Position numbers and translations under genes: made by a program. Of a stretch of 64,000 nucleotides of DNA, positions 13,738-56,400 are shown in pieces. The notes beneath the pieces were generated by a model. That model did not search any database. It saw nothing but the letters and a program-made list of their open reading frames with translations, and was not told the DNA's origin. Source of the stretch: Auanema rhodensis (taxonomy: Eukaryota; Animalia; Nematoda); NCBI GenBank assembly GCA_964057225.1, contig OZ059896.1, positions 17,918,001-17,982,000 on the forward strand, given 5' to 3'. Numbering within the stretch: position 1 is the first letter of the stretch; every line of letters begins with the position of its first letter.

Positions 13738-16700
13738 ATGTCATCTTGGTTTTCGTATTTTACGTAAGTGCAATTAGATTTATTTTTTTAGTTTTATCCT
13801 TTCTTATATTTAAATTATTTACATTTTATCGATTTTTTAGTATTTTCATTGACTACCACAACTATTACTACTACTATTACTATCACTAATTACTTTGCTA
13901 ATTATTTCATTATTTAGTACTATATATTCAAAATTTATTCAAATTTTTTTTATATCTAACTTTGTATTAAAACTTCTAACTTTGAATGAGATATTTTGAA
14001 CTTCTTTATGATCTTTCTGTTTTCTGATTTTTTTAAAGATTATAACATATTTTATAATATGAAAGAAAAATTACAATTTTCATTGTTTTAATTTTTTATT
14101 CAATCATTAAACTTACCAAGAACTAAAATATTATTTTTCCATTCTATTTTAAGAGAAAATATCCTATTTTATGAACCTAAAAAGATATAATTATAATATT
14201 ATTATTTTAACTGTGAACATACTATTATTTTAAGCTACTATTTTATAAAAAACAACAAAATTGCTGTTTTAAAAGAAATTATTTCAATTATTCCTAAATT
14301 AACTTAGTAATTTATATAGATACACATACATTTCATGGAAATTTAGCACAAAAACTAGAAAAAAACTTTGTTTATTTGTTTGTTTACTCTTTCATTGTAG
14401 TAGACGTCTACCAGATGTACCGGAGAATGTAGAGGAAGAAGAACTAGCAGAAGAGCAGCATGCTCAATCTCCAACAGACCATGTAATTCTATTATATTCT
14501 TCGTTTTTACTAATTTCTGTGCAATTTTTAGTCACCTCCTCAAAGCTCTTCTGCTATACCCGGCCATCTGGAGTATGCAATGGATGAACTATCATTACAA
14601 CAGCGGGCTGCTATTGAAGAAGTCAGTTGCATTAAGAGAAAATATAACAGAAATTTACCCTTTTCCTACTTGTAGGTACTTCAAAGGGCTGAATCATCAC
14701 GTAAAGAAGCTCGGATAGTTATCGACAGCACACGTCTGAACAGATTAAAGAAAATTCCCAAAATGACGGCAGAATCTACTAGATCGTTTAGCGTTGAAGA
14801 CGCAAATATACGTGACAGTGACAGCGACGAGGAAAGGCAGAAACAGTTGATACAGATGGATTCCATACCTGAAAGTGAGTATATATGAAAGAAAGAGAGA
14901 AACGTGAATTTGAAATAGAGATAAACTGTTATAATGATATTTCAGGTGTTACTATTTCTGTGCTAGAAGTCGAAAGTACAAGTTTAACACCTGTACGAGA
15001 AAGATTAAAACATGAAGATAATGTTGAAACAGAAGAAGAAAAAATAGATGAAGAAAAAGGTATGAAAGCCATATATATATTCAAGTTGATAAACGAATAC
15101 GAATAAAATTTATAGAAATACCTCTAACTACAAGTATTGGCTCACGCATGAAGTTAATACGAACACATATAGCTCAATGGTTTAATTCACTTGATTATGA
15201 TGGCGATTATATGTCTCTTACAAATAATACGGGATATCAGGGTCTGTAAAGCAAATATATGAAATTATTTATCTTAACTTTTGATGTGCATAATTAACGA
15301 TTTAACAACACACGTTTTCAGATAAACGGATAAAAATTCAAGTATCACTTCAGCCTTTAGTTATGGATTATATAAATGCTCTTTCAAGCGGGATTGTTAT
15401 AGCTGCTACATTGGAATATTGTCAAAAAGCCTTAGAGGGTTCACCATTATTCAAAGCATACTGTCATGATTTATGCGAAACTATCTTTCAATTGGCGTAC
15501 AGCCAGCTTATACTTAGCTCCATCGATGATGAGAACATTCGCCAGCTTAATGGCTATTGCTCAAAGCTGGCATTAGACGTTATGGATACGGTTTATTTCA
15601 TAATACTTAATCGTACATTAGAAGATATTAGTTCACCTATGACAGAAATTCAGCAATTGAGTCAACTTCATCGATCACGTTCTTTTGTTAGTGCAGCAGA
15701 GTTAGAATCTGTAATCGAACGATTATCAGAAGATTTTGGTAAGCTTATATCTATAAAGGTCTTGCTAAATTTCACTTGCAGATGAGGAGGATTCTGTTTA
15801 TTCTTCAGTGAGTACTTCTTCTATTCTCTGTTATGAGGTATGATTATACAGATTTACAAAATATTTTTAAAGAGAATTGTCTTTGATTTAGGTACTTGCT
15901 GATTCGATTAATGAGCCAAATGAAGAAGAAATAGATAAAATTGATATTAATGAGTTCGATGAAGTCGTTAGCACGATATACGAACATCAACCGCTTGATC
16001 TACGGCGCTGCCTTCGCGATAATGTACTAGTAGAGCAATGGTCGGAGGAGCAAATTTTGATGATGGAAGAACATGCGATTTGTGAAAAGGCAGCAGTTGT
16101 AACACCTGAATCACAAGTTAAAGTCATTATTAGCCCCGCAACACCACTGACACCACCCCCGCGTCCACCACCTCCTCGCAACATTCAGTACTACTCCAGC
16201 GAAGAAGACTCCGAAGAACAATTATACGATTCAGGTTTGTTTCCTGAAGCTATATTTTCTGATATTTCACAAAACAACATCGAAAACGTTGACAATTACG
16301 GAATAGATGAAGATTCGACAAATGTTGTAGATGATAGCACGGACAATAGAACGAAGGACTATCAGAAAGCAATTGAAACAACGCAGGCAGAAGTTACATA
16401 TGTTCCAAAAGGTCAATGCTTCCCAAGCCAAACTTCAGTTGATAAGCCAGTTCCACCTCCACGTCCTCTACCACCTCAGGTTACCATCTCTGAAGATCAA
16501 GGTGATGACCGTTCCAGTGTTACATCTGGTGCTGACGTTGACAGAAGCTTCGATGCTTCTAGTTCTTTCGATCAGTATCCCGGACCATCAACATCTGAAA
16601 AGCCAAATGAAGAAGTAATCTCACTCTACCCAACTGATAAGCCAGAAGATCCTATAGCTTTAACCGAGGAAGAGCTACAATACCTTTCTCGAATTCAAAG

Positions 16701-19700
16701 ATTGGCCGAGGAAAGTGCGTTCGAGCAAGTTGTTCCACCTCCACGTCCTCTACCACCTCAGGTTACCATCTCTGAAGACCAAGGTGATGACCGTTCCAGT
16801 CATACATCTGGTGCTGACGTTGACAGAAGCTTCGACGCTTCTAGTCCATTCGATCAGTATCCCGGACCATCAACTTCTGAAAACCCAAATGAAGAAGTAA
16901 TCTCACTCTACCCAACTGAAAAGCCAGAAGATCCTATAGCTTTAACCGAGGAAGAGCTAGAGCATATTGCTCGAATTCAACGATTGGCAGAGGAAAGTGC
17001 GTTTGCGCAAATTGCTCCACCTCCACGTCCTCTACCACCTCAGGTTACTATCTCTGAAGACCAAGGTGATGACCGTTCCAGTCATACATCTGGTGCTGAC
17101 GTTGACAGAAGCTTCGAAGATTTAGTTGGGGCAGCCCCGACAGAAGAGATTCAAACAGACGACGTCGAAGAAACAGTCGTTGTGGGAACATCCGAGCCTA
17201 TTGATCTCACTCAAGACGAATTAGATTTTATTGTTGGAATTCAGCGATTGCCTAGCCAAACTTCTATTGATAAGCCAGTTCCACCTCCACGTCCTTTACC
17301 ACCTCAGGTTACCATCTCTGAAGACCAAGGTGATGACCGTTCCAGTCATACATCTGGTGCTAACGTTGACAGCAGCTTTGATACTTCTAGTTCATTCGAA
17401 CAGTATCCCGGACCATCAACTTCTGAAAACCCAAATGAAGAAGTAATCTCACTCTACCCAACTGAAAAGCCAGAAGATCCTATAGCTTTAACCGAGGAAG
17501 AGCTACAATACATTTCTCGAATTCAACGATTGGCAGAGGAAAGTGCGTTTGCGCAAATTGCTCCACCTCCACGTCCTCTACCACCTCAGGTTACCATCTC
17601 TGAAGACCAAGGTGATGACCGTTCCAGTCATACATCTGGTGCTGACGTTGACAGAAGCTTCGAAGATTTAGTTGTCGCAGCCCCAACAGAAGAGATTCAA
17701 ACTGACGACGTCGAAGAACCCGTCGTTGTGGGAACATCGGAGCCTATTGATCTCACTCAAGACGAATTAGATTTTATTGTTGGAATTCAGCGATTGCCTA
17801 GCCAAACTTCTATTGATAAGCCAGTTCCACCTCCACGTCCTTTACCACCTCAGGTTACCATCTCTGAAGACAAAGGTGATGACAGTTCTAGTGTTACATC
17901 TGGTGCTGACGTTGACAGAAGCTTCGAAGATTTAGTTGTCGCAGCCCCAACAGAAGAGATTCAAACTGACGACGTCGATGAACCCGTCGTTGTGGGAACA
18001 TCGGAGCCTATTGATCTCACTCGAGACGAATTAGATTTTATTGTTGGAATTCAGCGATTGCCTAGCCAAACTTCTATTGATAAGCCAGTTCCACCTCCAC
18101 GTCCTCTACCACCTCAGGTTACCATTTCTGAAGACCAAGGGGATGACCGTTCCAGTGTTACGTCTGGTGCTGACGTTGACAGAAGCTTCGACGCTTCTAG
18201 TTCATTCGAACAGTATCCCGGACCATCAACTTCGGAAAATCCAAATGAAGAAGTAATCTCACTCTACCCAACTGAAAAGCCGGAAGATCCTATAGCTTTA
18301 ACCGAGGAAGAGCTAGAGCATATTGCTCGAATTCAACGATTGGCAGAGGAAAGTGCGTTCGAGCAAGTTGTTCCACCTCCACGTCCTCTACCACCACAGG
18401 TTACCATCTCTGAAGACCAAGGTGATGACCGTTCCAGTCATACATCTGGTGCTGACGTTGACAGAAGCTTCGAAGATTTAGTTGTCGCAGCCCCAACAGA
18501 AGAGATTCAAACAGAAGACGTCGAAGAAACACTCGTTGTGGGAACATCCGAGCCTATTGATCTCACTCAAGACGAATTAGATTTTATTGTTGGAATTCAG
18601 CGATTGCCTAGCCAAACTTCTATTGATAAGCCAGTTCCACCTTCACGTCCTCTACCACCTCAGGTTACGATCTCTGAAGACCAAAGTGATGACCGTTCCA
18701 GTGTTACATCTGGTGCTGACGTTGACAGAAGCTTCGACGCTTCTAGTTCATTTGATCAGTATCCCGGACCATCAACTTCTGAAAACCCAAATGAAGAAGT
18801 AATCTCACTCTACCCAACTGAAAAGCCAGAAGATCCTATAGCTTTAACCGAGGAAGAGCTAGAGCATATTGCTCGAATTCAACGATTGGCAGAGGAAAGT
18901 GCGTTCGAGCAAGTTGTTCCACCTCCACGTCCTATACCACCACAGGTTACCATCTCTGAAGACCAAGGTGATGACCGTTCCAGTCATACATCTGGTGCTG
19001 ACGTTGACAGAAGCTTCGTAGATTTAGTTCTCGCAGCCCCAACAGAAGAGATTCAAACTGACGACGTCGATGAACCCGTCGTTGTGGGAACATCGGAGCC
19101 TATTGATCTCACTCGAGACGAATTAGATTTTATTGTTGGAATTCAGCGATTGCCTAGCCAAACTTCTATTGATAAGCCAGTTCCACCTCCACGTCCTCTA
19201 CCACCTCAGGTTACGATCTCTGAAGACCAAAGTGATGACCGTTCCAGTGTTACATCTGGTGCTGACGTTGACAGAAGCTTCGACGCTTCTAGTTCATTCG
19301 AACAGTATCGCGGACCATCAACTTCGGAAAATCCAAATGAAGAAGTAATCTCACTCTACCCAACTGAAAAGCCGGAAGATCCTATAGCTTTAACCGAGGA
19401 AGAGCTAGAGCATATTGCTCGAATTCAACGATTGGCAGAGGAAAGTGCGTTCGAGCAAGTTGTTCCACCTCCACGTTTTCTACCACCTCAGGTTACGATC
19501 TCTGAAGACCAAGGTGATGACCGTTCCAGTGTTACATCTGGTGCTGACGTTGACAGAAGCTTCGACGCTTCTAGTTCATTCGAACAGTATCCCGGACCAT
19601 CAACTTCGGAAAATCCAAATGAAGAAGTAATCTCACTCTACCCAACTGAAAAGCCGGAAGATCCTATAGCTTTAACCGAGGAAGAGCTAGAGCATATTGC

Positions 19701-22700
19701 TCGAATTCAACGATTGGCAGAGGAAAGTGCGTTCGAGCAAGTTGTTCCACCTCCACGTCCTCTACCACCACAGGTTACCATCTCTAAAGACCAAAGTGAA
19801 GATCGTTCCAGTGTTACATCTGGTGCTGACGTTGACAGAAGCTTCGAAGATTTAGTTGTCGCAGCCCCAACAGAAGAGATTCAAACTGACGACGTCGAAG
19901 AAACAGTCGTTGTGGGAACATCCGAGCCTATTGATCTCACTCAAGACGAATTAGATTTTATTGTTGGAATTCAGCGCTTGCCAAGCCAAACTTCTGTTGA
20001 TAAGCCAGTTCCACCTCCACGTCCTCTACCACCTCAGGTTACGATCTCTGAAGACCAAGGTGATGACCGTTCCAGTGTTACATCTGGTGCTGACGTTGAC
20101 AGAAGCTTCGACGCTTCTAGTTCATTCGAACAGTATCCCGGACCATCAACTTCTGAAAACCCAAATGAAGAAGTAATCTCACTCTACCCAACTGAAAAGC
20201 CAGAAGATCCTATAGCTTTAACCGAGGAAGAGCTACAATACATTTCTCGAATTCAACGATTGGCAGAGGAAAGTGCGTTCGAGCAAGTTGTTCCACCTCC
20301 ACGTCCTCTACCACCACAGGTTACCATCTCTAAAGACCAAAGTGAAGATCGTTCCAGTGTTACATCTGGTGCTGACGGGGACAGAAGCTTCGAAGATTTA
20401 GTTGTCGCAGCCCCAACAGAAGAGATTCAAACTGACGACGTCGAAGAACCCGTCGTTGTGGGAACATCGGAGCCTATTGATCTCACTCAAGACGAATTAG
20501 ATTTTATTGTTGGAATTCAGCGCTTGCCAAGCCAAACTTCTGTTGATAAGCCAGTTCCACCTCCACGTCCTCTACCACCTCAGGTTACCATCTCTGAAGA
20601 CAAAGGTGATGACAGTTCTAGTGTTACATCTGGTGCTGACGTTGACAGAAGCTTCGAAGATTTAGTTGTCGCAGCCCCAACAGAAGAGATTCAAACTGAC
20701 GACGTCGATGAACCCGTCGTTGTGGGAACATCGGAGCCTATTGATCTCACTCGAGACGAATTAGATTTTATTGTTGGAATTCAGCGATTGCCTAGCCAAA
20801 CTTCTATTGATAAGCCAGTTCCACCTCCACGTCCTCTACCACCTCAGGTTACCATTTCTGAAGACCAAGGGGATGACCGTTCCAGTGTTACGTCTGGTGC
20901 TGACGTTGACAGAAGCTTCGACGCTTCTAGTTCATTCGAACAGTATCCCGGACCATCAACTTCGGAAAATCCAAATGAAGAAGTAATCTCACTCTACCCA
21001 ACTGAAAAGCCGGAAGATCCTATAGCTTTAACCGAGGAAGAGCTAGAGCATATTGCTCGAATTCAACGATTGGCAGAGGAAAGTGCGTTCGAGCAAGTTG
21101 TTCCACCTCCACGTCCTATACCACCACAGGTTACCATCTCTGAAGACCAAGGTGATGACCGTTCCAGTCATACATCTGGTGCTGACGTTGACAGAAGCTT
21201 CGAAGATTTAGTTGTCGCAGCCCCAACAGAAGAGATTCAAACTGACGACGTCGAAGAAACAGTCGTTGTGGGAACATCCGAGCCTATTGATCTCACTCAA
21301 GACGAATTAGATTTTATTGTTGGAATTCAGCGCTTGCCAAGCCAAACTTCTGTTGATAAGCCAGTTCCACCTCCACGTCCTCTACCACCTCAGGTTACGA
21401 TCTCTGAAGACCAAGGTGATGACCGTTCCAGTGTTACATCTGGTGCTGACGTTGACAGAAGCTTCGACGCTTCTAGTTCATTCGAACAGTATCCCGGACC
21501 ATCAACTTCTGAAAACCCAAATGAAGAAGTAATCTCACTCTACCCAACTGAAAAGCCAGAAGATCCTATAGCTTTAACCGAGGAAGAGCTACAATACATT
21601 TCTCGAATTCAACGATTGGCAGAGGAAAGTGCGTTCGAGCAAGTTGTTCCACCTCCACGTCCTCTACCACCACAGGTTACCATCTCTAAAGACCAAAGTG
21701 AAGATCGTTCCAGTGTTACATCTGGTGCTGACGGGGACAGAAGCTTCGAAGATTTAGTTGTCGCAGCCCCAACAGAAGAGATTCAAACTGACGACGTCGA
21801 TGAACCCGTCGTTGTGGGAACATCGGAGCCTATTGATCTCACTCGAGACGAATTAGATTTTATTGTTGGAATTCAGCGCTTGCCAAGCCAAACTTCTGTT
21901 GATAAGCCAGTTCCACCTCCACGTCCTCTACCACCTCAGGTTACCATCTCTGAAGACAAAGGTGATGACAGTTCTAGTGTTACATCTGGTGCTGACGTTG
22001 ACAGAAGCTTCGAAGATTTAGTTGTCGCAGCCCCAACAGAAGAGATTCAAACTGACGACGTCGATGAACCCGTCGTTGTGGGAACATCGGAGCCTATTGA
22101 TCTCACTCGAGACGAATTAGATTTTATTGTTGGAATTCAGCGATTGCCTAGCCAAACTTCTATTGATAAGCCAGTTCCACCTCCACGTCCTCTACCACCT
22201 CAGGTTACCATTTCTGAAGACCAAGGGGATGACCGTTCCAGTGTTACGTCTGGTGCTGACGTTGACAGAAGCTTCGACGCTTCTAGTTCATTCGAACAGT
22301 ATCCCGGACCATCAACTTCGGAAAATCCAAATGAAGAAGTAATCTCACTCTACCCAACTGAAAAGCCGGAAGATCCTATAGCTTTAACCGAGGAAGAGCT
22401 AGAGCATATTGCTCGAATTCAACGATTGGCAGAGGAAAGTGCGTTCGAGCAAGTTGTTCCACCTCCACGTCCTCTACCACCACAGGTTACCATCTCTAAA
22501 GACCAAAGTGAAGATCGTTCCAGTGTTACATCTGGTGCTGACGTTGACAGAAGCTTCGACGCTTCTAGTTCATTCGAACAGTATCCCGGACCATCAACTT
22601 CTGAAAACCCAAATGAAGAAGTAATCTCACTCTACCCAACTGAAAAGCCGGAAGATCCTATAGCTTTAACCGAGGAAGAGCTAGAGCATATTGCTCGAAT

Positions 22701-25700
22701 TCAACGATTGGCAGAGGAAAGTGCGTTCGTGCAAGTTGTTCCACCTCCACGTCCTCTACCACCTCAGGTTACCATCTCTGAAGACCAAGGTGATGACCGT
22801 TCCAGTCATACATCTGGTGCTGACGTTGACAGAAGCTTCGAAGATTTAGTTGTCGCAGCCCCGACAGAAGAGATTCAAACTGACGACGTCGAAGAACCCG
22901 TCGTTGTGGGAACATCGGAGCCTATTGATCTCACTCAAGACGAATTAGATTTTATTGTTGGAATTCAGCGATTGCCAAGCCAAACTTCTGTTGATAAGCC
23001 AGTTCCACCTCCACGTCCTCTACCACCTCAGGTTACCATTTCTGAAGACCAAGGGGATGACCGTTCCAGTGTTACGTCTGGTGCTGACGTTGACAGAAGC
23101 TTCGACGCTTCTAGTTCATTCGAACAGTATCCCGGACCATCAACTTCGGAAAATCCAAATGAAGAAGTAATCTCACTCTACCCAACTGAAAAGCCGGAAG
23201 ATCCTATAGCTTTAACCGAGGAAGAGCTACAATACATTTCTCGAATTCAACGATTGGCAGAGGAAAGTGCGTTCGAGCAAGTTGTTCCACCTCCACGTCC
23301 TCTACCACCACAGGTTACCATCTCTAAAGACCAAAGTGAAGATCGTTCCAGTGTTACATCTGGTGCTGACGTTGACAGAAGCTTCGAAGATTTAGTTGTC
23401 GCAGCCCCAACAGAAGAGATTCAAACTGACGACGTCGAAGAACCCGTCGTTGTGGGAACATCGGAGCCTATTGATCTCACTCAAGACGAATTAGATTTTA
23501 TTGTTGGAATTCAGCGCTTGCCAAGCCAAACTTCTGTTGATAAGCCAGTTCCACCTCCACGTCCTCTACCACCTCAGGTTACCATCTCTGAAGACAAAGG
23601 TGATGAGAGTTCTAGTGTTACATCTGGTGCTGACGTTGACAGAAGCTTCGAAGATTTAGTTGTCGCAGCCCCAACAGAAGAGATTCAAACTGACGACGTC
23701 GAAGAAACAGTCGTTGTGGGAACATCCGAGCCTATTGATCTCACTCAAGACGAATTAGATTTTATTGTTGGAATTCAGCGCTTGCCAAGCCAAACTTCTG
23801 TTGATAAGCCAGTTCCACCTCCACGTCCTCTACCACCTCAGGTTACGATCTCTGAAGACCAAAGTGATGACCGATCCAGTGTTACATCTGGTGCTGACGT
23901 TGACAGAAGCTTCGATGCTTCTAGTTCTTTCGATCAGTATCCCGCACCATCAACTTCGGAAAAACCAAAAGAAGAAGTAATCTCACTCTACCCAAGTGAT
24001 AAGCCAGAAGATCCTATAGCTTTAACCGAGGAAGAGCTACAGCACATTGCTGAAATTCAAAGATTGGCCGAGGAAAGTGCGTTCGAGCAAGTTGTTCCAC
24101 CTCCACGTCCTCTACCACCTCAGGTTACCATCTCTGAAGACCAAAGTGAAGATCGTTCCAGTGTCACATCTGGTGCTGACGTTAACAGAAGCTTCGAAGA
24201 TTTAGTCGTCGCAGCCCCAACAGAAGAGATTCAAACTGACGACGTCGAAGAACCCGTCGTTGTGGGAACATCGGAGCCTATTGATCTCACTCAAGACGAA
24301 TTAGATTTTATTGTTGGAATTCAGCGCTTGCCAAGCCAAACTTCTGTTGATAAGCCAGTTCCACCTCCACGTCCTCTACCACCTCAGGTTACCATCTCTG
24401 AAGACAAAGGTGATGACAGTTCTAGTGTTACATCTGGTGCTGACGTTAACAGAAGCTTCGAAGATTTAGTCGTCGCAGCCCCAACAGAAGAGATTCAAAC
24501 AGACGACGTCGAAAAAACCGTCGTTGTGGGAACATCTCAGCCTATTGATCTCACTCAAGACGAATTAGATTTTATTGTTGGAATTCAGCGCATGCCAAGC
24601 CAAACTTCTGTTGATAAGCCAGTTCCACCTCCACGTCCTCTACCACCTCAGGTTACCATCTCTGAAGACTACGGTGATGACCATTCCAGTGTTACATCTG
24701 GTGCTGACGTTAACAGAAGCTTCGAAGATTTAGTTGTCGCAGCCCCGACAGAAGAGATTCAAACAGACGACGTCGAAGAAACAGTCGTTGTGGGAACATC
24801 CGAGCCTATTGATCTCACTCAAGACGAATTAGATTTTATTGTTGGAATTCAGCGCATGCCAAGCCAAACTTCTGTAGATAAGCCAGTTCCACCTCCACGT
24901 CCTGTACCACCTCAGGTTACCATCTCTGAAGACCACGGTGATGATCATTCCAGTGTTACATCTGGTGCTGACGTTGACAGAAGCTTCGATGCTTCTAGTT
25001 CTTTCGATCAGTATCCCGCACCATCAACTTCGGAAAAACCAAAAGAAGAAGTAATCTCACTCTACCCAAGTGATAAGCCAGAAGATCCTATAGCTTTAAC
25101 CGAGGAAGAGCTACAGCACATTGCTGAAATTCAAAGATTGGCCGAGGAAAGTGCGTTCGTGCAAGTTGTTCCACCTCCACGTCCTCTACCACCTCAGGTT
25201 ACCATCTCTGAAGACCACGGTGATGACCATTCCAGTGTTACATCTGGTGCTGACGTTGACAGAAGCTTCGAAGATTTAGTTGTCGCAGCCCCAAAAGAAG
25301 AGATTCAAACAGAAGACGTCGAAGAAACAGTCGTTGTGGGAACATCCGAGCCTATTGATCTCACTCAAGACGAATTAGATTTTATTGTTGGAATTCAGCG
25401 ATTGCCTAGCCAAACTTCTATTGATAAGCCAGTTCCACCTCCACGTCCTCTACCACCTCAGGTTACCATCTCTGAAGACCACGGTGATGACCATTCCAGT
25501 GTTACATCTGGTGCTGACGTTGACAGAAGCTTCGACGCTTCTAGTTCATTCGAACAGTATCCCGGACCATCAACTTCGGAAAATCCAAATGAAGAAGTAA
25601 TCTCACTCTACCCAACTGAAAAGCCGGAAGATCCTATAGCTTTAACCGAGGAAGAGCTAGAGCATATTGCTCGAATTCAACGATTGGCAGAGGAAAGTGC

Positions 25701-43700: not shown

Positions 43701-46700
43701 TAGCAAGGATTCTGTTGGTAAATCTTCTAGTTTACCACATGGCTATAGAAGAACTTCTGTTGTTTATTCTTCATGTGTAAAGTCTTCTGATTATCTTGAT
43801 AGTGAAAATATCAGAAGCCATTCAATGACACTTCAGAAATCAGATAAAGATATCTTACGTAGAGAAAGTAGTGTTCATGTTGTTTATACGGATCATTCAC
43901 TACGAGCATCTCAATCATCACACCAATGTGATGATGAAGATGATGTTGACAAAATCATATCGAACACTAATGAAGGATTTGTTCCGAAAGAGAATGCTTT
44001 CTTATTACTTTGGGATGAGATTGGTACTGTGGATCAGGATACAACTCCGAAGGTATCACCAACAGTTTTACGTCGTTCGCTTAGTGACATAGTAATCGAT
44101 GCTCTTGAGCCTCCTATGGAATCATTACGAGCTTCGTACAGTGCTAACTGCGTGAATAAGACATGTGATGCCTGTCGTATAGCTCATAATGCGTTTGAAA
44201 GTTGTGAACAACATAGCTATATAGATAGTAAAGATTTGCTATGTAATGTGGATTTCTTATGTCGCTTGAACTTTGCTGCGAATCGTCTGACTGAAGATAT
44301 TGCGGAAATAGCTGGCAGGGAGTTGCAAGCTTACTATCGAGCACAGTCGAATCCACGAGCTCGATATTTCTCGGACAATCGCTATGCTGGTAAATCAGAA
44401 CAAGAAAGTGACAGTGAAGAAGATACTAGAATTAAGTAAGTTTTATAAATATTAATTTCCATGTTTGTCCAGATAATTAAGATGTTCAAGTTGTTTCCTC
44501 TACAATCTGGCCATAAATATATTTATATTTATTTATTATTTCAGACGTGATATATCTGCTGCAGCTGCTGCTGTTGCTGCTTCTACAACAACAGAAGCAA
44601 CTCCTTTTGGATTATTTTCATTCTTTTCACCAAAGAGAAGCATTTCTGAACGACCACGATCTGCTTTGTCATTTTTATCTGGTCCAGAAAGAAGACCTCG
44701 TAAACAATCTGATGAAAAACCAGACTTTATGCAACTTCTACGAAGGTAATATCATTCAATGTATTATTATATCAATTAAATATGTATGCTTCAGATCATC
44801 AAGAGCTGAAGCTCGTGGTTCGATTGATAGCACTGTTCGAATACCGGATGATGCACTACAAGGATTATCAGATCAAGAACGTGAGCATATCATGAGCGTA
44901 TTGAACAAATCTGCCCGCTCTCCATCTGTATCACGACGACCATCATCTGTTCTTCAAACCGTACCAGATCTCGAAAAACTTTCACAAGCTGAAAGAGAAC
45001 ATATTCAAAGTGTTTTGGAGAAGGCTGAGAAGAAACCATTGCCATTCATGATTCCAGTTCAAACACATGCCAAACGATTCAGTCGTGGAGAATCAATACA
45101 AACTGAAGCAACCGAACCATACTCTGGTGCATCAACTAATTCAAATTGCAGTGTTGATGTAGTTGACTCAAAACCATTAACTCAATTATCTACAACATAT
45201 GCTTTGGAAACACCACAAATTGATCTATCAAAACACGAAACTCCAATTCTTGTTGGAACACCAGATAGGGAAGATGTAGAAGATTACACACCTACAGAGA
45301 TGGAACCAGAAATGTTAACCAATCCTGATCAAAAAACTTCTGGATACAAAGCTACTCCGCCACCTCCTATCGATATCCAAACAGCTACACCTCCACTAAC
45401 AGCTCGTTCAGATTCATCAAAGCCAACTTCTGCTTCATCATTTGGTTTCCAAACACCATCATTTGGAGGAATCAAATCATTTTTCGGAAAAGCATCGCAA
45501 CAAGTTAAAAATGCTGCCGATCAGTTTTCAAAGGAAACAAGTGGAACAGATATACTTCGTGCTCCTACACAAAAGCCGTCAAATGAGCCCACATCACAAA
45601 TAACTGATGAAGAGATGAGACACATACAAGAAGTGCTTCAGAAGGCTGAGCAATCTTTGATGAGATCATCTGTACCTGATGTGCCTGTTATACCATCAAA
45701 ACTTCCTTTGACTGATGATGAGTTACACCATATTCGAAAAATTAATGAACAGGCCGAACGTGAGCTTATGGCAATGAACAAATCGAAGAAAGAGGATCAT
45801 GAAGTTCATTCGTCAAAGATTCAAAGCTCTGATGGTTCTCCACAGGAACTCACTCAGGAAGAACTTGATCATATCATGAGAATTGCTCAAATGGCGGAAG
45901 ATGACTCATTTACTCCTCAATTTGGTCAGAAGGCCATACTTTCTCAACCGATTCAACCAAAATCTGTATCAACCTTAGACAGATACGCACATGATCTCAC
46001 AGACGAAGAACTTGATCATATTTCTAGAATACAGGAGATGGCTGATGCTGAGGTGATGATGCCAGTTCAAAAGAAAGCTCTACCAAAAACACCTGAGCCT
46101 GTTGTTCCTGAACTGTCACAAGAAGAACTTGATCATATTCGAAGAATTCAAGAAAGGGCTGATGCTGAGTTAACCGAAGCCGTTCAATCTAAGGTACGGC
46201 CTATTCCAAATCCAAAGCCGGAGAGCATTGAGTTAACACAAGAGGAGCTTGACCACATCCGTCGTATTCAAGAAATGGCTGATACAGAGTTAACAATATC
46301 ATCTTCTAGTGTTTTCAAGACGATGCTGCCAACGCAGACACCAGTTCCAGACTTATCGCAGGAACAAATTGATCATATTCGTCGAGTTCAGGAGATGGCT
46401 GACGCACAGTTGAGTATGCCCTCTGGGCCTATTTTCCAATCAACGCCTACACCTGTGCCTCAAGAACCTGAACTATCACAAGAAGAAATTGATCATATTC
46501 GTCGAATCGCAGAGATGGCTGACGCACAGTTGAGTATGCCTTCTGGGCCTATTTTCAAATCAACGCCTACACCTGTGCCTCAAGAACCTGAACTATCGCA
46601 AGAAGAAATTGATCATATCCGTCGAGTTCAGGAGATGGCTGACGCACAGTTGAGTATGCCTTCTGGGCCTATTTTCAAATCAACGCCTACACCTGTGCCT

Positions 46701-49700
46701 CAAGAACCTGAACTATCACAAGAAGAACTTGATCATATTCGTCGAATCGCGGAGATGGCTGATGCTGAGTTTACTATTCCAGCTCCAGCAAGACCAACTC
46801 AATCTTCAGAATTATCTGCAGAAGAGTTAGCTCATATCCGTGGCATACAAGAAATGGCTGATTCAGAATTCAGAATGCCTTCTGTCAAACATGCTGAACC
46901 AATTACTCAAGTTCCAGATATGTCAGAAGAAGAATTAGAGCACATTCTTCGTATTCAAGAAATGGCGGAAGCAGATCTTCAGTCAACGTTTGTCAAATCA
47001 CCGGCCCAATATACTAATGTTACTGCTGAAGAACTTGCTCACATTGAACGTATTCAACGATTAGCTGATACCGAAGTCATGTCTTCTGAACCACAATTCA
47101 TGAGACACTTGTCGGAATCACCATATTCATCAGCTGATGAGCAACTTCAATCGTCTCTATCCGAATATTCGGATGATTTAGAAGCTTCAATGGAACCTTA
47201 TAACGTTGTTTCTAATAATATGGAACCTCAGTATAATCTAACTCAAGAAGAGCTTGAACATATCCGACATATTTCTGAGCTTGCTGACCTAGATTCACGA
47301 AAGCCATCAGCGATACCCCAACCACGCATGCCGTCTGACACACCGCAATTAAGTTTGGAAGAACTAGAGCATATTAAGCGCATTGCTTCTCTAGCAGATC
47401 AAGACATGATACTTACATCTGGAGCAATGGCTGCAACTCAGCCATACACTGCTACTGCTAGCAACGAGTGGAATGAACCTCACTTGCCTGAAGCAAATTC
47501 TGCAATGGAACACTACTATGCTGCAGACAAACAGGATCTCCGCTCGGAAACTATCGATGTAGAGCATACTAAGCTGAATAAGCTTTTGGTTGAAGTTGGC
47601 TCTCAAGATTTCGTGTTAGATGTTGAGCAGGGCATTCCTGCATCATCTGAAATGACTTTGCCAGATACTGCTGTTCGTACAGATGCTGATATTGAAGATG
47701 TTCTGTCGCCCATGCATTATGTTTCGCAACATGAAGATGACTACAGTGATGCGTCAAGCCGTGAACGTGGCAGTAAATCTCTACCAAGTGCTCGTTCAAG
47801 TGATTTCGATATCAAATCAGTTGATGAGATGAGACAAGAAATGAAATCGAACATTGGACATTGGTATGAAGAGCAATTATCATTTATGAAGGAGACAATT
47901 CAAGATGAAGAAGCAAACAGCGATATCATTGAGAATGAAAGTATGTCTACTGGAAATTTTTTTTTTATCCTAAAACTTTATTTTCAGATGCTGTACAAGC
48001 AGCTGAAGATGAAGATATATGGGGAGGAATGGTTGAAGATGATATGTTATCACTTGGTGATATGAAGACTCGTCTATCTCCTGAGATGGTGGATTATTCT
48101 AACAACGTGTTACCGTCAGGTATAACTTGTTAAATATTTTAATTATAATAATAGCTATATAATGAAAATAGCGTTTCAAGACCAATTTTTTTTGTTTTGA
48201 AACCCATAAAATTTTTGTTGAAATATTAGTATAGACATGATGTGTTTAAAAACAAGAGTGTCAACTTCATCTACATCTTTGTCTATATTAGAGACGGAGA
48301 AAGGTCGTCTAGAATAGAAAAAGTAGAAAGAGAAAGAATGAAAGCATGAGAAAGAGAGATTAAAGAAAGGAAAACGAGAGTATAGCCCAAGTAACAACAT
48401 CAACTCAATTCAAATTCTCTCACACATTTTGTTTGATTTTCATATGTTTCAAATGGAAAAGAAGAACTACATATTAAGTTACATCATTTCCCGTTTCCGT
48501 CTTTATCTTTTTCGGAGAAATAAAAATATATACTTATATTCTATAATCTATATATATATATATATAATATATTCCATATAATCTAATATTTTTAACAAAA
48601 AATATTAGTAAAATATTAAATTTAAATGTTTTTTTAGCCCTTAAATTACTTTGATAGTCTTTTCTCTTTTTAATTAAATTATTTAAATTATATTAAACTT
48701 TTACTAAAATCTATAGTTTTAACTTTGAAACATCAAGAATCTTTTATGAACTTTATCTTTAAACCTTTTAATATAAAACTTAAAATAGTAATTCTATTTA
48801 ATGATATATGTACTAACTATATATATATAATATATAAAATTAATTTAAATGAACATTTTCATTTAAGAATAATTGAATCTAAAGAAGAATAAAAAAAAAC
48901 TTCTGAATTAATAATTTAGCTTTAAAGATAATAAATCAAAATCATATTATAACAAGATTGAAGATTTTACTTTGAATTATTTGAAGATTTCAATATTTTT
49001 TTGACAAAGATATACATGTATGTTTCGTTATATGTATATATATATAATTATATATATATATATATATATATGTTTATCTTTGCTTTTTTGTGTTAAAACT
49101 ATCAAGAAAAAATAATTTTCCATTTAAAGTAGTCTCTGCTACTTCTCTCCTTCTCCTGTAATTATATTGAACTGCCGATCAACATCGTGTGTGATGCGTT
49201 ATTGCTCTCATCTAGAGCTTAGCTTCAGCTCATCTGATTTGTGGTCAAGGGGCTGGAGCGAAGGAGAAGCGAAGAAAGACGATGGCCTGACATGAGTTGA
49301 GAACTAAGTCATATCAGTTTGGAATAACAACATGCCAATGGCTATATCTAGCTTCCAAGCGGCTATTCTTCTTAGACGACGCCTGAAACAAAGCTTCTCG
49401 CTCATTGATTCTGCTTATAGCACTTGAAAAGCTTGAAAAGTCAAATTTGTATTCTCGTTCTCATGCTAATTTGCATACAGAATGACATGACATACAAACG
49501 TTGTCTAGTATAAAAGCTTGATATGATTTTGGGCTTCAAATTCAAATTCAAATTTTTTTTAATATTTTTGTAAAAATAAGAGAATATAAAAAACATATTT
49601 TATTTACAAAATAAAACAAAACAAACAATAATAATACAAAAAAAAGTTTTCTACAAAATTTATTTTAGTATATTGATTATCAAATAATATTATTTTAAAT

Positions 49701-49837: not shown

Positions 49838-49885
<48 letters not shown>

Positions 49886-50444
49886 TCCAGAGATATAGGA
49901 GTGTTAGACCTTCAGCATGCATTTACAAAATGCATTTCAAAAACGAAAACACTGCCTTCTGTTTTCTAGCTAGTAAAGCTTCGGCATAATCTGAATGCTC
50001 AGTTGATTTTCATGGACTTCTTGAGTCTAAATAGTTCTAATTATTGGCCAGCAGATGAAAAATGAGGGGAAAGTTAACAAAAAAAATAATAAAAGATAGG
50101 AATAAATATAATTTTCAATAATAATAATAAGTTTGTATGAAAAAAGAACCTTAAATTTGCTTGAAATGGTCTTCAAAATTATTGAAAATAACAAAAAAAT
50201 TTTTAATTTCTTCTGATTTTTTATAAAAAAAAATGAAATAAAGCTGGCTATTCTATTACTTGCTTTCATCCATGAAATAAAGTAAAATCTCACATTTCAT
50301 TTCTCAAATTTATTCAGAAGAAAAAAAAGAAGAAAAAGATATGAAAATTACATGATCGTCTATGAAGGATCATGCTTCCAAAGTAAAAAAGGAAAAACGA
50401 GTCAAATTTCCTTTCTAAAAAATGAATAAAGAAAGAGAGAAACG

Positions 50445-50480
<36 letters not shown>

Positions 50481-53400: not shown

Positions 53401-56400
53401 TTTCTCACGAATTATATTGGTTGAGAGAGAAAAGAATGCAGAGAGAGATTGAAGAAAGAGAGAGAGAGAGGTAGCTAGGAAAAGAAAAGAAGTAAGGTAG
53501 TTAGAAAGAAAGAAAGAGAGAAAAACTTTGATCATAAGGAAGAAGCTGGCCAAGACGAAGGGATAAAGCTTGGAACGGCTCATATACGTATCATCATCAT
53601 CTTTCCATCCTACTTACTCCTTCTCTTCTCCATTTTCCGCTTCTAGAATTCTCTTCATGTCTTCCTTACTGAGGTTAATACACGTTAGTTTGAAAGACTT
53701 AAAGGATAGTGTGTTATAACATCAAAGTCTGCTTTTAGTTTTTTTCTATTTCTTCTGATATTCTTTTGTTTTTTTTAATCAATAATCATATTTTCAATAT
53801 ATTTATTGATTTTCTTTTTTTTTCAAAATCTAATATGTAAAAGTTAATATATAAAGAAATATTTAACATTTTATGTATATTTAACATACATATACACAGT
53901 TGTATGTGTATATCTTGTTCATCTTCCCATTCGGCTTCAAGCAGGAAAATTGCTTAGAAGAGAATGATTCATGTTGTCCCGGAGCCTGGCTCCTTGGCTT
54001 CTTTCGAGACCCATGGGCACTGAATGAAGTAGTCGATCTGAATGGCCACCCAAGTCGGCTTCCGGAGTAGATGTCAACAGAAGAAAAGAGAAAGAACTTA
54101 GATGCTATGCTTCTCTGCATCCTTTGTATCATTTCCTTGTTTTTTGTCATAGAAAAAACAGCTCAATTCGTGTCATTGTCGTTTTCTCTCGATATTGGTC
54201 AGTCAAAATTTGAAAATTTTTACATAAAAATCTTTTTCAAAAAGAAATTATGCTTTCTGATTTATAAATAAAGGAAAAGATGAGAAGAATTCAAATAAAT
54301 TTATTATAAATCATCAAAAACTTGAACATCTCTCTCTATCCATCATATTTTCTATTATACGATATTACTTCTATAATGTATCTTTACTTCATTCTCTCTC
54401 ATCTTAGCTTCTTACTTTCATACTCTGAATCATTCAACCCTCTCGGACTCACTTCAAATTTTCTCATTACTTTCAGACTATGAGTCATTACATTCCAGTT
54501 TGATACATCATTCTTTCAGAATCTGGTGACAAGCTCAACGACAGTAGTTCCTAGTAGTACTAGCAGAGTAGAAGGATTAGATGATTTGACTGAGGAGGAG
54601 CGGATGAAGATTGAAGCTGTGATGGCCTGTGCTCAGCTTGACGAACAACAGGCCAGCAGTTCGACTAGCGATATATCACATATGAATCAGTCACAAACTA
54701 GGAATATTTCAAATACAAGGTGAAATCTATTCTAAGATTCATTTTTCATTTTTTTTTGTTTTTTCCAGCTCAACAATTGGTCATATTGCTCAAGCATCAT
54801 CATCTAAATCGCCTAATATTTCTAATAGTAATAGTAATTATAGTAAATATATTGATGATGACGATGTAGCAAGCAATATTCCATCGGAGCTAGCTCATCT
54901 ACCACCGGAAGAACGAGAACAAATCTTGAGGGTTATGAGACAAGCAGAAGATGAAGGAATCATTGCGGATACACATTCGACAAATCCGTTTGCACCCTCA
55001 CCTACACCATCTATGGGAGCCTGGCAGAGTAGCATTCTACCATCAACGTCAACCCATTCCGTAGCTTCACACCATTCACAAGTTCCACAGATTAGTAGCA
55101 GGTAAATTAATAATTTTCATATTGTATTGATTATTATACATATAACTATATTGGAATTGATCTATAATAGTGAATATTTCAGTACGGTTCAAACTGGATT
55201 AGAAGGCTTATCATGGGAAGAACAAGAGAAAATCATGAGAGTTATGGCAGAAGCCGAAATGATGAACATGCCAGCAGCAGATCAACGATCGGTTATGCCA
55301 TCTATGCCTGTAACGTCATCGAAACCAGTCAACATCAGTACAACAAACTCTCAACCATCAACGCTGCCAATTCATGTTTCATCTCAGTAAGTTATGATTT
55401 CCTATATCTAATACTAACTTTCTCAATTATAGGTCCGAAATTCCTCCTGGACTTGAAGATCTCTCGGAAGAAGAGCGAAATAAGATTCTTGCTGTAATGG
55501 CTGAAGCAGAAAAGTTTGCCACGCCTTCAATGGTTCCCACGCCGTCAGGCGTTAGCAACATGATTCCATCGTCATCTCAGCCCGTAGTGCCAGTATCTTC
55601 AACACCATCTATTAGTAGCCGGTATGTTATTTGAAAGCCTCAACATATTGCTTTATGAAGAAGAATATTTATCTTCCGTTTTCAGAGAAATGGAGCCAAC
55701 GACGGCATCATCAAGAGTTGCTCCTGCACCTATTCCATCATCCGCAGAGCCGGATATGCTAAGCGGCATGTCTGATCTTACAGACGAAGAGAGGGAAAAG
55801 ATTCTTCGAGTTATGGCTGCCAGCCAAGCTGACGATTTCTCATCCATTACTGTAGCAAGTTCTGCACGTCCAGATGTAGGATTCCGTGGAGATGAGAGTG
55901 AAATAGCTACAACCAGCGCTCCATCATTCCGATATTATGAGAACCCAGACGAAGATGCTACCTACACAGACGAAGTACTTCCACAAGAAGAGGATCGTTC
56001 GCGTACCACTGAAGTTGAACGTGACTTCTTATCAGAATGGGATATGCCTCGTATAACATCAGAAACGGTTTCTGAGAGCCATATTTCCAGGTAAAAATAA
56101 GTTTTGATATTATATTTAACATCTATATGTGCATTTAGTTATGATGAAGAAGAACATATGAGACCAAGATCAAACTCCCAACAACCATCAACCTCTGTAA
56201 CATCGACCCCAACAGAGTATGTTTCATTCATATAATTAAAGTTGATTGAAATTAATTAAAATTGTTTTTTCAGGTACACTGTTAATAATTCTGATATGAT
56301 CAAATCAGGTAAATATAGCTATTTCATTTATTTATTAATTTATTTTTAAATGTTTAATATTCTATAATATACGTGATCATACTAAATTTATATTTTGATT

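What the first reader, a model, noticed from the sequence alone, without database searches (positions are those of the whole stretch)
14580..55830. About 116 copies of a Piccolo/RIM N-terminus-like helix along one protein
One helix family recurs throughout: 1 copy near the N-terminus (DELSLQQRAAIEE|VLQRAE), 56 in array 1, 37 in array 2, 17 in the 44795-47940 exon, and 5 downstream (e.g. LEDLSEEERNKILAVMAEAE). The downstream copies closely resemble the DLSxLxEEERxxIxAVM helix at the N-termini of RIM and Piccolo, which in RIM forms part of the Rab3-binding region. The series EEERxxI -> EREHI -> EELDHI suggests the repetitive region is an amplified version of this helix, possibly a polyvalent vesicle tether or self-association module.
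Basis: partly seen in the sequence, partly recalled or inferred. Interest (0 to 1): 0.75.

Follow-up and report, generated by a model that had tools for sequence, protein, structure and literature searches.

The report
Amplified RIM/Piccolo-type helix in Clarinet
This is a roundworm's giant synapse-scaffold gene clarinet (cla-1), and the short helix it repeats 116 times is statistically the same motif that opens the Rab3-binding helix of RIM and rabphilin and sits at the start of Piccolo, a link the clarinet papers I could search do not make and which gives a testable idea of how this protein gathers synaptic vesicles.

Summary
Observation confirmed. The + strand carries 116 copies of one helix motif (L-S/T-x-E-E-x-x-x-I-x-x-V/I-x-x-x-A): 1 N-terminal, 56 + 37 in two tandem arrays inside one 9460-codon exon, 17 in the next exon, and 5 in single small exons. 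There are none on the minus strand.

The gene is the orthologue of C. elegans cla-1 (clarinet, tag-80). A PDZ-like exon pair and a C2 domain lie downstream, 22 array units have the 94-aa length reported for the C. elegans repeat, and related proteins carry the name Tag-80.

A profile of the eight "EER-type" copies was searched three ways:
- All solved structures: rabphilin-3A ranks first, at the start of its Rab-binding helix, followed by Slp2-a and melanophilin.
- The worm's own 181-Mb genome: the UNC-10/RIM N-terminal helix is the best non-self hit (E 0.02).
- 1.84 billion proteins: RIM-type N-termini and FYVE_2 (Rab-binding domain) proteins are hit at E 1e-4 to 1e-5, each at the first positions of that domain.

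Array-type copies link to the EER-type copies (hhalign P 1e-6) but are only marginally RIM-like themselves.

Function is not shown. The helices are about 17 residues against 34 in rabphilin, there is no zinc finger or SGAWFF element, and Piccolo, which has the same motif, did not bind Rab3A. No other scan note I found covers this repeat.

The parts
13738..13761 (+).
   Evidence: A pattern search of the window matches the N-termini MSSWFSY… / MASWFNY… of the orthologues P0050, P0140 and P0133. The exon end is inferred, not mapped.
14580..14621 (+). First half of the N-terminal helix copy (MDELSLQQRAAIEE), followed by a GT donor; the intron is phase 0.
   Evidence: The orthologues have the same helix uninterrupted, for example …LTSEQRERIEQVLQRAEASRKEARV… in P0140.
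14676..14873 (+). Exon carrying the second half of the N-terminal helix (VLQRAESSRKEARIVIDSTRLNRLK…).
   Evidence: AlphaFold2 on this exon alone gives a helix over residues 2-25. It is 48% identical over 67 residues to Mesorhabditis P0140 residues 121-186, E 4e-11. PDB and Pfam give no Rab-effector match for this half.
16057..44439 (+). Giant exon: an open frame of 9460 codons holding both arrays and a unique 360-residue tail.
16453..31823 (+). Array 1: 56 units in irregular order, 22 of type A (94 aa, helix LTEEELEHIARIQRLAEESAF) and 34 of type B (88 aa, truncated helix LTQDELDFIVGIQRLP). Every unit has PPPRPLPP and …SSVTSGADVDRSF.
   Evidence: TRF; unit spacing and order; unit consensus sequences; motif counts.
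31824..43467 (+). Array 2: 37 units of about 106 aa (helix LTQEELDHIARIQRMAAESSF), 93% alike, without the PxxP motif.
44796..47939 (+). Exon with 17 divergent helix copies. The first three are EER-type (…LSDQEREHIMSVL…, …LSQAEREHIQSVLEKAEKK…, …ITDEEMRHIQEVLQKAE…) and the rest are EELDHI-type. The linkers differ in sequence and length.
   Evidence: The exon ends are approximate.
54562..54660 (+). EER-type copy 1 (…GLDDLTEEERMKIEAVMACAQ…), in its own small exon.
54875..54973 (+). EER-type copy 2 (…LAHLPPEEREQILRVMRQAEDEG…), in its own small exon.
55184..55282 (+). EER-type copy 3 (…GLEGLSWEEQEKIMRVMAEAE…), in its own small exon.
55437..55535 (+). EER-type copy 4 (…PPGLEDLSEEERNKILAVMAEAEKF…). 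It is the closest copy to the Piccolo/Rim motif, with 11 of 19 positions identical to DLSQLSEEERRQIAAVMSR.
   Evidence: AlphaFold2 gives a helix over residues 11-27.
55753..55851 (+). EER-type copy 5 (…MSDLTDEEREKILRVMAASQ…), in its own exon.

Best explanation
The window holds the long-isoform part of the nematode active-zone gene cla-1 (clarinet, formerly tag-80), in a species other than C. elegans whose repeat region is two to four times larger than published C. elegans counts.

One short amphipathic, acidic helix recurs 116 times. It has an L-S/T N-cap followed by E-E-x-x-x-I-x-x-V/I-x-x-x-A. It is the same motif as the first half of helix alpha-1 of the Rab-binding domain of RIM/UNC-10, rabphilin and the Slp/melanophilin family. 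It is also the same as the 19-residue N-terminal motif shared by Rim and Piccolo.

The most likely history (inferred): a RIM/Piccolo-like ancestor carried this helix next to a zinc finger. The nematode lineage lost the zinc finger and multiplied the helix, first by exon or segment duplication (EER-type copies, then EELDHI-type copies), then by tandem amplification of 88-106-residue units.

The most likely mechanism (inferred, not shown): each 15-25-residue helix is a weak docking site displayed on long acidic disordered linkers. The many copies give avidity for a partner on synaptic vesicles, which lets CLA-1L hold vesicles around the active zone. The leading candidate partner is GTP-bound RAB-3 or RAB-27/AEX-6.

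My odds:
- The gene is cla-1: 0.95.
- The EER-type copies are homologous to the RIM/rabphilin alpha-1 start: about 0.8.
- The array copies derive from the same helix: about 0.85.
- The short copies bind a Rab directly: about 0.2-0.25.
- The long N-terminal copy binds a Rab directly: about 0.35.
For: Gene identity:
- A C2 domain lies downstream (PF00168, 9e-14), and PDZ-like exons are visible by eye.
- 22 units have the 94 aa / 282 bp length published for C. elegans (PMC5728718 and PMC12402934).
- Multi-copy relatives are nematode proteins, including 'Tag-80' of Aphelenchoides. P0146 carries PDZ and C2. That tag-80 is the earlier name of cla-1 is my own knowledge; PMC5633380 calls tag-80 the piccolo/aczonin orthologue.

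Motif identity:
- The profile A2 (8 EER-type copies) against 177,635 PDB sequences ranks rabphilin-3A 1ZBD_B first (E 0.0079, chain residues 8-30). Five Slp2-a SHD1-Rab27A fusion sequences follow (E 0.05-0.08), and melanophilin is at E 1.5.
- A2 against the worm's own 181-Mb genome in six frames gives the UNC-10 N-terminal exon as best non-self hit (E 0.0225, 22.3 bits). I identified that exon as unc-10.
- Targeted scores are 23.7 bits for UNC-10, 15.6 for RBF-1 and 13.7 for a third FYVE_2 gene.
- A2 against 1.84 billion proteins hits P0094 (E 1.1e-4), whose next exon is a RIM-type zinc finger. It also hits P0074, 'RIMS2-like' of Schistocerca (E 1.5e-5), and P0112 (E 3.5e-4). In both, Pfam FYVE_2 starts at the matched helix (profile positions 1-2).
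- hhalign gives A2 against own Rab-binding helices P 4.2e-7, and A2 against array-type copies P 9.8e-7.

Folding and conservation:
- AlphaFold2 predicts a helix.
- EER-type copies and the N-terminal copy are kept from Plectus to Steinernema, Anisakis and Onchocerca. In the 17-copy exon the helix is kept while the linkers diverge.

Function, from the literature:
- CLA-1L is needed for vesicle clustering and colocalises with RAB-3 (PMC5728718).
- RIM helix a1 is sufficient for Rab3A binding (PMC1472246).
- SHD1 alone binds Rab27A (PMC9120966).
Against: - Only the first 16-23 residues match. The predicted helix is 17 residues, against a 34-residue helix in rabphilin and 37 in JFC1 (PMC2018616).
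- Melanophilin residue R35, needed for Rab27A binding, lies 25 residues after the LT anchor. In 115 of the 116 copies that position is beyond the helix.
- There is no SGAWFF-like element and no RIM-type double zinc finger in the window, the downstream DNA, or eight orthologues.
- Pfam FYVE_2 does not hit any piece of the window.
- The reciprocal genome search with the worm's own three Rab-binding helices returned only themselves. Only three candidates were scored, so this is a weak negative.
- The second half of the N-terminal helix has no Rab-effector match.
- Holo-aczonin (Piccolo), which has the same motif, was not pulled down by Rab3A-GTPgammaS (PMC2164979).
- The mixed profile A1 finds ribosomal uS13 first in the PDB.
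- The library search also returns repeat proteins that look bacterial and carry a similar motif (for example P0040, P0065). The motif can therefore arise independently.
- Within the arrays, the ratio of non-synonymous to synonymous variant codons is only slightly lower in the helix (0.42-0.52) than elsewhere (0.52-0.78), on small counts.
Confidence: 0.55

Rival explanations
1. The helices do not bind Rabs. They are 'stickers' that associate with each other, or with a non-Rab partner shared with Piccolo, inside a long acidic disordered chain. This would drive condensate formation or set the reach of CLA-1L from the dense projection to the periactive zone.
For: Hunt et al. 2025 (PMC12402934) model C. 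elegans units as a central helix flanked by disordered tails. AlphaFold 3 packs the helices side by side in their model. Piccolo has the motif but did not bind Rab3A. The helices are half the length of a Rab-binding helix. The units also carry other conserved short motifs (PPPRPLPP, TS[GE]AD) that could be the real binding sites (the PxxP idea is in PMC12823496).
Against: Nothing here shows self-association. The helices are strongly acidic, which does not favour packing against each other. The best-conserved positions are exactly those conserved in Rab-binding helices.
Confidence: 0.3
2. The likeness to RIM, Piccolo and rabphilin is convergence. L-S/T-x-E-E is a common helix capping box followed by a generic amphipathic pattern, and the repeats are simply an expanded spacer with no specific partner.
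For: The mixed profile's best PDB hit is ribosomal uS13, 'ELTQEELERIVQIMQ'. The library search also returns bacterial-looking repeat proteins with a similar motif. The match is short. Pfam gives no FYVE_2 hit in the window, and the reciprocal search was empty. Wang et al. 1999 read Piccolo's own repeats as spacers.
Against: Three independent unbiased searches put Rab-effector alpha-1 helices at the top, always at the first residues of the domain. The gene is already a RIM/Piccolo relative through its PDZ and C2 domains. The L-x-x-L upstream of the cap is shared with UNC-10 and Piccolo. The motif has been kept across distant nematodes while the linkers changed.
Confidence: 0.15

Closest known systems
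C. elegans CLA-1L (Clarinet, tag-80) repetitive region
   Same: Same gene family and layout: a giant N-terminal tandem repeat, then PDZ and C2 domains. The 94-aa / 282-bp unit with a central helix flanked by acidic disordered sequence is the same, and PxxP motifs are present (PMC5728718, PMC12402934, PMC12823496).
   Different: This species has 93 array units of three kinds (94, 88 and about 106 aa), against 23 tandem 94-aa repeats or an about 4000-residue repeat region reported for C. elegans. The cla-1 papers I could read state that nothing outside PDZ and C2 resembles vertebrate or other active-zone proteins. They do not mention the helix-to-RIM/Piccolo link or the EER-type copies.
RIM / UNC-10 N-terminal helix a1 (Rab3-binding)
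   Same: The motif L-S-x-L-S/T-x-E-E-R-x-x-I-x-x-V-M/L is the same. The profile scores 22-24 bits on this worm's own UNC-10 and is its best non-self hit genome-wide.
   Different: The RIM helix is long, sits next to a double zinc finger and an SGAWFY element, and occurs once at the N-terminus. Here the helix is about 17 residues, lacks those partners and occurs 116 times.
Piccolo/aczonin N-terminal 19-residue motif (DLSQLSEEERRQIAAVMSR; Wang et al. 1999)
   Same: 11 of 19 positions are identical with the copy at 55437-55535. Piccolo is also a giant PDZ-C2 active-zone scaffold, and its motif is likewise not followed directly by a zinc finger.
   Different: Piccolo has a single copy near its N-terminus, and Piccolo keeps two zinc-finger pairs elsewhere. 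Its motif has no known function, and holo-Piccolo did not bind Rab3A.
Rabphilin-3A Rab-binding domain and Slp/Slac2 SHD1 (Pfam FYVE_2, PF02318)
   Same: These are the top PDB hits of the EER-type profile, aligned at the first residues of helix alpha-1. JFC1/Slp1 and Slp2-a show that the helix can work without a zinc finger.
   Different: Those helices have 34-37 residues and need residues in their second half (melanophilin D25 and R35), plus an SHD2/SGAWFF-type element for full affinity. None of that is present here.

Membership tests
CLA-1 / Clarinet (tag-80) orthologue | [quoted passage not shown] | tested here: met
   C2: PF00168, 9e-14 on L006:1-183, plus 0.015 on L004:9837-9944. PDZ: two exon pieces at L004 8672-8957 read as RIM/Piccolo-like PDZ by eye, but Pfam did not score the split pieces. 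The orthologue P0146 has PDZ (3.6e-6) and C2 (1.2e-21).
CLA-1 / Clarinet (tag-80) orthologue | Large N-terminal tandem repeat with a 282-bp / 94-aa unit, each unit holding a central helix. | tested here: met
   22 units of exactly 94 aa, plus 34 of 88 aa and 37 of about 106 aa. Helix predicted. Published unit length.
CLA-1 / Clarinet (tag-80) orthologue | Sequence relatives that are named or recognisable as cla-1/tag-80. | tested here: met
   Multi-copy hits are nematode proteins, including 'Tag-80' and 'BMA-TAG-80 isoform a' of Aphelenchoides besseyi. The N-terminal exon is 48% identical to Mesorhabditis P0140 (E 4e-11). I did not fetch the C. elegans protein itself.
Rab-binding domain of RIM/rabphilin/Slp (Pfam FYVE_2, PF02318) | N-terminal signature of helix alpha-1 (L-S/T-x-E-E-x-x-x-I-x-x-V). 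| tested here: met
   Met for the EER-type copies. Only marginal for array-type copies. The Pfam model itself does not reach any piece of the window.
Rab-binding domain of RIM/rabphilin/Slp (Pfam FYVE_2, PF02318) | Long alpha-1 helix (about 34-37 residues), including the second half that carries Rab-contact residues. | tested here: not met
   The predicted helix is 17 residues. A proline or glycine ends most copies 15-25 residues after the cap. The N-terminal copy may reach about 36 residues if it is continuous across the exon junction (the joined form was not modelled), but its second half matches no Rab effector.
Rab-binding domain of RIM/rabphilin/Slp (Pfam FYVE_2, PF02318) | Double Cys4 zinc finger after alpha-1. 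| tested here: not met
   The pattern search found none in the window, the downstream loci, or eight orthologues. This agrees with PMC12823496.
Rab-binding domain of RIM/rabphilin/Slp (Pfam FYVE_2, PF02318) | SGAWFF / SHD2-type second element. | tested here: not met
   No [ST][GL]xW[FY][FY] in the window, the downstream loci, or the orthologues.
Rab-binding domain of RIM/rabphilin/Slp (Pfam FYVE_2, PF02318) | GTP-dependent binding to Rab3, Rab27 or Rab8. | not testable with these tools
Rim-Piccolo N-terminal 19-residue motif (Wang et al. 1999) | Sequence D-L-S-x-L-S/T-E-E-E-R-x-x-I-x-A-V-M. | tested here: met
   11 of 19 positions identical with the copy at 55437-55535, compared by eye with the motif printed in PMC2164979. 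The profile hits RIM N-termini.
Rim-Piccolo N-terminal 19-residue motif (Wang et al. 1999) | A single copy close to the N-terminus of the protein. | tested here: not met
   One copy is near the N-terminus (14580-14750). The 115 others are internal, and the most Piccolo-like ones lie in exons at 54.5-55.9 kb.

The most novel reading that the evidence does not exclude
CLA-1L is a polyvalent Rab effector of a new kind. More than a hundred zinc-finger-less mini Rab-binding helices each bind RAB-3-GTP or RAB-27-GTP weakly. Strung on an acidic disordered chain, they capture and cluster synaptic vesicles by avidity. The same logic may explain the unexplained N-terminal motif of Piccolo, and of insect proteins annotated RIMS2-like that may be Fife.
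Probability: 0.2. Interest if true: 0.85.

Novelty: new variant of a known kind. Interest (0 to 1): 0.62.

Why it matters
The repeat region of CLA-1L is repeatedly called enigmatic. The founding paper states that it has no homology to vertebrate proteins, and that nothing outside PDZ and C2 links clarinet to other active-zone proteins.

The repeated helix is the RIM/rabphilin-type alpha-1 start and the Rim-Piccolo N-terminal motif. That result does three things:
- It ties clarinet to the Piccolo/RIM family through a third shared element.
- It names concrete candidate partners for vesicle clustering: RAB-3 and AEX-6/RAB-27.
- It points to specific residues and exons to mutate.

The work also shows that the EER-type copies and the long N-terminal helix are kept across distant nematodes. 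Copy number differs widely between species, so the repeat number is an evolvable property of this scaffold.

Tried and rejected
- **Pfam on ten pieces of the window and on the N-terminal exons.** There was no FYVE_2 hit. The apparently significant hits (DUF7443, DUF6619, BOP1NT, FumaraseC_C and others) each recur once per repeat unit and are summed chance matches. DUF7443 has no other site in this genome, and its only control-genome signal is in Methanosarcina. The same artefact appears in the orthologues, for example YecM and Bac_small_YrzI.
- **Mixed profile A1 against the PDB.** It found ribosomal uS13 and no Rab effector, so I split the copies by type.
- **Reciprocal genome search with the worm's own three Rab-binding helices.** It returned only self hits, and only three candidates were scored.
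- **N-terminal second exon.** BLASTP against the matching rbf-1 exon gave no alignment. Against the PDB it gave only chance kinesin hits at E 0.6-1.4. The by-eye likeness (VL..AE.SR) and the shared phase-0 intron position with rbf-1 therefore stay a lead, not evidence.
- **Variant-codon counts within the arrays.** The helix is only slightly more constrained than the rest, on small counts, so this does not decide anything.
- **Contigs around P0077.** No domain was found nearby, and that cluster of single-copy N-termini stays unidentified.
- **Earlier notes of the scan.** Nothing was found on unc-10 or clarinet.
- **Papers not held.** Wang et al. 2001 (J Biol Chem, on the Rim1 helix) and Dulubova et al. 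2005 could not be read.
- **Tool failures.** The atlas call failed on protein length. The script machine was lost, so later steps used the other tools.
- The N-terminal helix across its intron and any spliced CLA-1 model were neither folded nor searched.
- **Human DNA.** No contig looked human.

Full report
**What is in the window.** Base composition shows a GC-rich block from about 16 to 48 kb inside AT-rich DNA. Tandem Repeats Finder reports two huge arrays: 17016-31801 with period 264 and 54.6 copies, and 31824-43425 with period 318 and 36.8 copies. Both lie in one open frame, 16057-44439, of 9460 codons. A second open frame, 44547-48065, follows. The translations show a repeated unit with a proline-rich or Q/P-rich start, an acidic Ser/Thr block, and a helix-like stretch LT-EEL-HI-RIQR-A.

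**Checking the count.** A motif pattern run on six frames gives 113 hits on the + strand and none on the minus strand. After I widened it to take in three downstream copies seen in the ORF list, it gives 116. The breakdown is:
- 1 N-terminal copy;
- 56 in array 1;
- 37 in array 2;
- 17 in the 44796-47939 exon;
- 5 copies, each in its own small exon, between 54.5 and 55.9 kb.

Array 1 is a mosaic of 22 type-A units (94 aa) and 34 type-B units (88 aa, helix cut short by a proline). Array 2 has 37 type-C units of about 106 aa. Each array unit also carries a conserved …SSxTS[GE]ADxDRSF… block. Types A and B carry PPPRPLPP as well (57 copies of that motif, and 92 of T[SE][GE]AD).

AlphaFold2, run on the copy at 55437-55535 with 28 copies as its alignment, gives a 17-residue helix with pLDDT 86.

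**Which gene it is.**
- About 18 kb downstream on the same strand there are PDZ-like exons (seen by eye) and a C2 domain (PF00168, 9e-14).
- The 94-aa / 282-bp unit is the one published for C. elegans CLA-1L (PMC5728718; PMC12402934).
- A note of this scan places lin-66 32 kb beyond the window's end. I did not test that.
- A profile search of 1.84 billion proteins returns multi-copy relatives from Steinernema, Bursaphelenchus, Aphelenchoides (named Tag-80), Mesorhabditis, Heterorhabditis, Nippostrongylus, Pristionchus, Plectus, Anisakis, Onchocerca and Syphacia.
- One of these relatives has PDZ plus C2, and another has C2.
- PMC5633380 calls tag-80 the C. elegans piccolo/aczonin orthologue. 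That tag-80 is the earlier name of cla-1 is my own knowledge.

The genome is 181 Mb, so this is not C. elegans.

The true first coding exon appears to be at 13738 (MSSWFSYF). It matches the orthologues' N-termini.

**Testing the resemblance to RIM and Piccolo.** Pfam alone sees nothing. There is no FYVE_2 hit on any piece, and the hits it does list are chance matches summed over the repeats.

A profile of 28 diverse copies (A1) finds ribosomal uS13 first in the PDB, and no Rab effector.

A profile of the eight EER-type copies (A2: the five downstream copies plus the first three of the 17-copy exon) behaves very differently:
- Against 177,635 PDB sequences, the top hit is rabphilin-3A (1ZBD_B, E 0.0079), aligned at the first residues of its Rab-binding helix. 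The next five are Slp2-a SHD1-Rab27A fusion sequences (E 0.05-0.08), and melanophilin follows at E 1.5.
- I located the worm's own Rab-effector genes. The FYVE_2 family search found a rabphilin-like gene and a third gene. A back-translated pattern found unc-10.
- A2 scores 23.7 bits on the UNC-10 N-terminal exon, 15.6 on the partial RBF-1 exon, and 13.7 on the third gene. These E-values are for short exon peptides and three chosen targets.
- In an unbiased six-frame search of the whole 181-Mb genome, the best hit after the eight training copies is the UNC-10 helix (E 0.0225, 22.3 bits).
- In the 1.84-billion-protein library, significant single-copy hits include P0094 (E 1.1e-4). Its next exon reads …CDICQKVKFADGIGHACNFC…, a RIM-type zinc finger like UNC-10's.
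- P0074, named 'regulating synaptic membrane exocytosis protein 2-like' in a grasshopper, is hit at E 1.5e-5. P0112 is hit at E 3.5e-4. In both, Pfam FYVE_2 begins at the matched helix, at profile positions 1-2.
- Wang et al. 1999 report a 19-residue motif, DLSQLSEEERRQIAAVMSR, as the only similarity between Piccolo and Rim outside the zinc finger, PDZ and C2 modules. The copy at 55437-55535 is identical to it at 11 of 19 positions, counted by eye.

**Are the array helices the same family?** Profile-profile comparison gives:
- EER-type against EELDHI/array-type: 91% probability, P 9.8e-7, over 28 columns;
- EER-type against the worm's own Rab-binding helices: 93%, P 4.2e-7;
- array-type against Rab-binding helices: only 42%, P 2.6e-4.

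The array copies taken alone are not specifically RIM-like.

**The N-terminal copy.**
- It reads …DELSLQQRAAIEE | VLQRAESSRKEARIVIDSTRLNRLK…, split by a phase-0 intron.
- The second exon alone folds as a helix over residues 2-25. If the helix is continuous across the junction, it would have about 36 residues, the length of a real Rab-binding helix.
- The copy is conserved in the orthologues, where it is uninterrupted (48% identity, E 4e-11 to P0140).
- The worm's rbf-1 has an intron at the same position (…EHIRQ | VLAKAEESRLKE…).
- However, BLASTP finds no alignment between those two exons, and the second half matches no Rab effector in the PDB.

**How it may work.** Shown here:
- a conserved short amphipathic acidic helix;
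- its display in more than 100 copies on acidic disordered linkers;
- its identity with the start of helix alpha-1 of Rab-binding domains.

From the literature:
- RIM helix a1 is sufficient for Rab3A binding (PMC1472246).
- SHD1 alone binds Rab27A (PMC9120966).
- CLA-1L clusters vesicles and colocalises with RAB-3.

Against a canonical mode:
- the rabphilin helix has 34 residues (PMC2018616);
- melanophilin needs D25 and R35, and R35 would fall beyond the helix in 115 of the 116 copies;
- there is no zinc finger and no SGAWFF;
- holo-Piccolo was not pulled down by Rab3A.

I therefore favour multivalent, individually weak docking helices of RIM/Piccolo ancestry. A vesicle Rab is the leading but unproven partner, at about 0.2-0.25 for the short copies. 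The main rivals are self-association or another partner, and pure convergence.

**Novelty.** The gene, its repeats and the helix in each repeat are known. The cla-1 papers I could search state that the region has no homology outside PDZ and C2. They mention PxxP motifs and the lack of a zinc finger, but not this link. Two further searches found nothing on it.

New here are:
- the statistical link to the RIM/rabphilin/Slp alpha-1 start and the Rim-Piccolo motif;
- the distinct EER-type exons and the long N-terminal helix, conserved across nematodes;
- the size of the expansion in this species.

No contig looked human. No step needed referral.

Noticed in passing
window 16453-43467 (every array unit): A second conserved short motif sits in each unit, …SSxTS[GE]ADxDRSF…, with 92 matches to T[SE][GE]AD in the giant exon. 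The same TSGAD/TEGAD motif recurs in the orthologues: 38 in Steinernema, 24 in Bursaphelenchus, 20 in Aphelenchoides, 10 in Mesorhabditis and 5 in Plectus. Its function is unknown. It may be as important as the helix.
   Followed up: partly
window 16453-31823 (array 1): There are 57 copies of PPPRPLPP (class II SH3-ligand-like, PxxPxR), one per type-A or type-B unit and none in array 2. This is about three times the roughly 20 PxxP motifs reported for C. elegans CLA-1L (PMC12823496).
   Followed up: partly
window 45441-45540 and 51497-51560: F-G-F glycine/serine motifs (…SSFGFQTPSFGGIKSFFGKASQ… and …STSFGFASFGKFASGAIQK…) recur in the orthologues (P0003 and P0140: …GGFGFGKLGALGG…; P0002: …KTFGFAPKLFG…), just upstream of the EER-type copies. 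From memory, Piccolo has a similar FGFG stretch. I did not check that.
   Followed up: partly
window 13738-13761: Probable true first coding exon (MSSWFSYF), conserved with the orthologues' N-termini.
   Followed up: partly
window 14621/14676 and L001 1043/1088: The intron inside the N-terminal helix of cla-1 (…IEE|VLQRAE…) is at the same motif position and phase as an intron in this worm's rabphilin-like gene (…IRQ|VLAKAE…). BLASTP sees no alignment between the second exons, so this is only a lead for common ancestry.
   Followed up: partly
P0002 and P0004 (unnamed proteins of 973 and 798 residues from sequencing-run assemblies): These have 9-11 copies of …DLSGLSxEExxKILSVMxKAE… spaced about 90 residues apart. 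Their N-terminus, MFKRLIGG…, recalls that of the Plectus orthologue (MSDMLRRFVGG…). The source organism is unknown, so multi-copy arrays of this helix may exist outside the named nematodes.
   Followed up: no
P0077 cluster and about 15 similar short proteins (L010 5253-5642): This is a family of single-copy N-termini, …PDVDMSHLSEEERMLIESVMAKAQMEE…, hit at library-wide significance. A grasshopper protein with a similar N-terminus is named 'RIMS2-like'. These may be insect Fife or RIM N-termini. No zinc finger was found within 10 kb.
   Followed up: partly
L003 (G000:C3:18736199-18736366, minus strand): A third gene in this genome has a Rab-binding-type helix (…LKGLSLEEQRQIRPVLERDLEFQRREKERLQ…) followed by Cys-rich exons. 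I did not identify it further.
   Followed up: no
window 44164-44214: A Cys/His cluster, CDACRIAHNAFESCEQH, lies in the unique tail of the giant exon. The pattern was not found in eight orthologues, so it is probably not a zinc site.
   Followed up: partly
window 31954-33153 and orthologues: Pfam gives seemingly strong but false hits on these repeats (DUF6619 1.5e-16, BOP1NT 1.4e-9, YecM 1.5e-51 on P0001). Weak per-unit matches are summed into a large score. This is a trap for automatic annotation of such proteins.
   Followed up: yes
literature, C. elegans tag-80 exon: The repeat exon of C. elegans tag-80 is among the most abundant sources of extrachromosomal circular DNA (PMC5633380). That is a plausible route for the large copy-number differences between species.
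   Followed up: no
window 15363-15785: A unique helical N-terminal exon lies here. Another note of the scan (s1-401565) reads it as AKAP-like helices. Pfam gives nothing significant, and I did not evaluate it.
   Followed up: no
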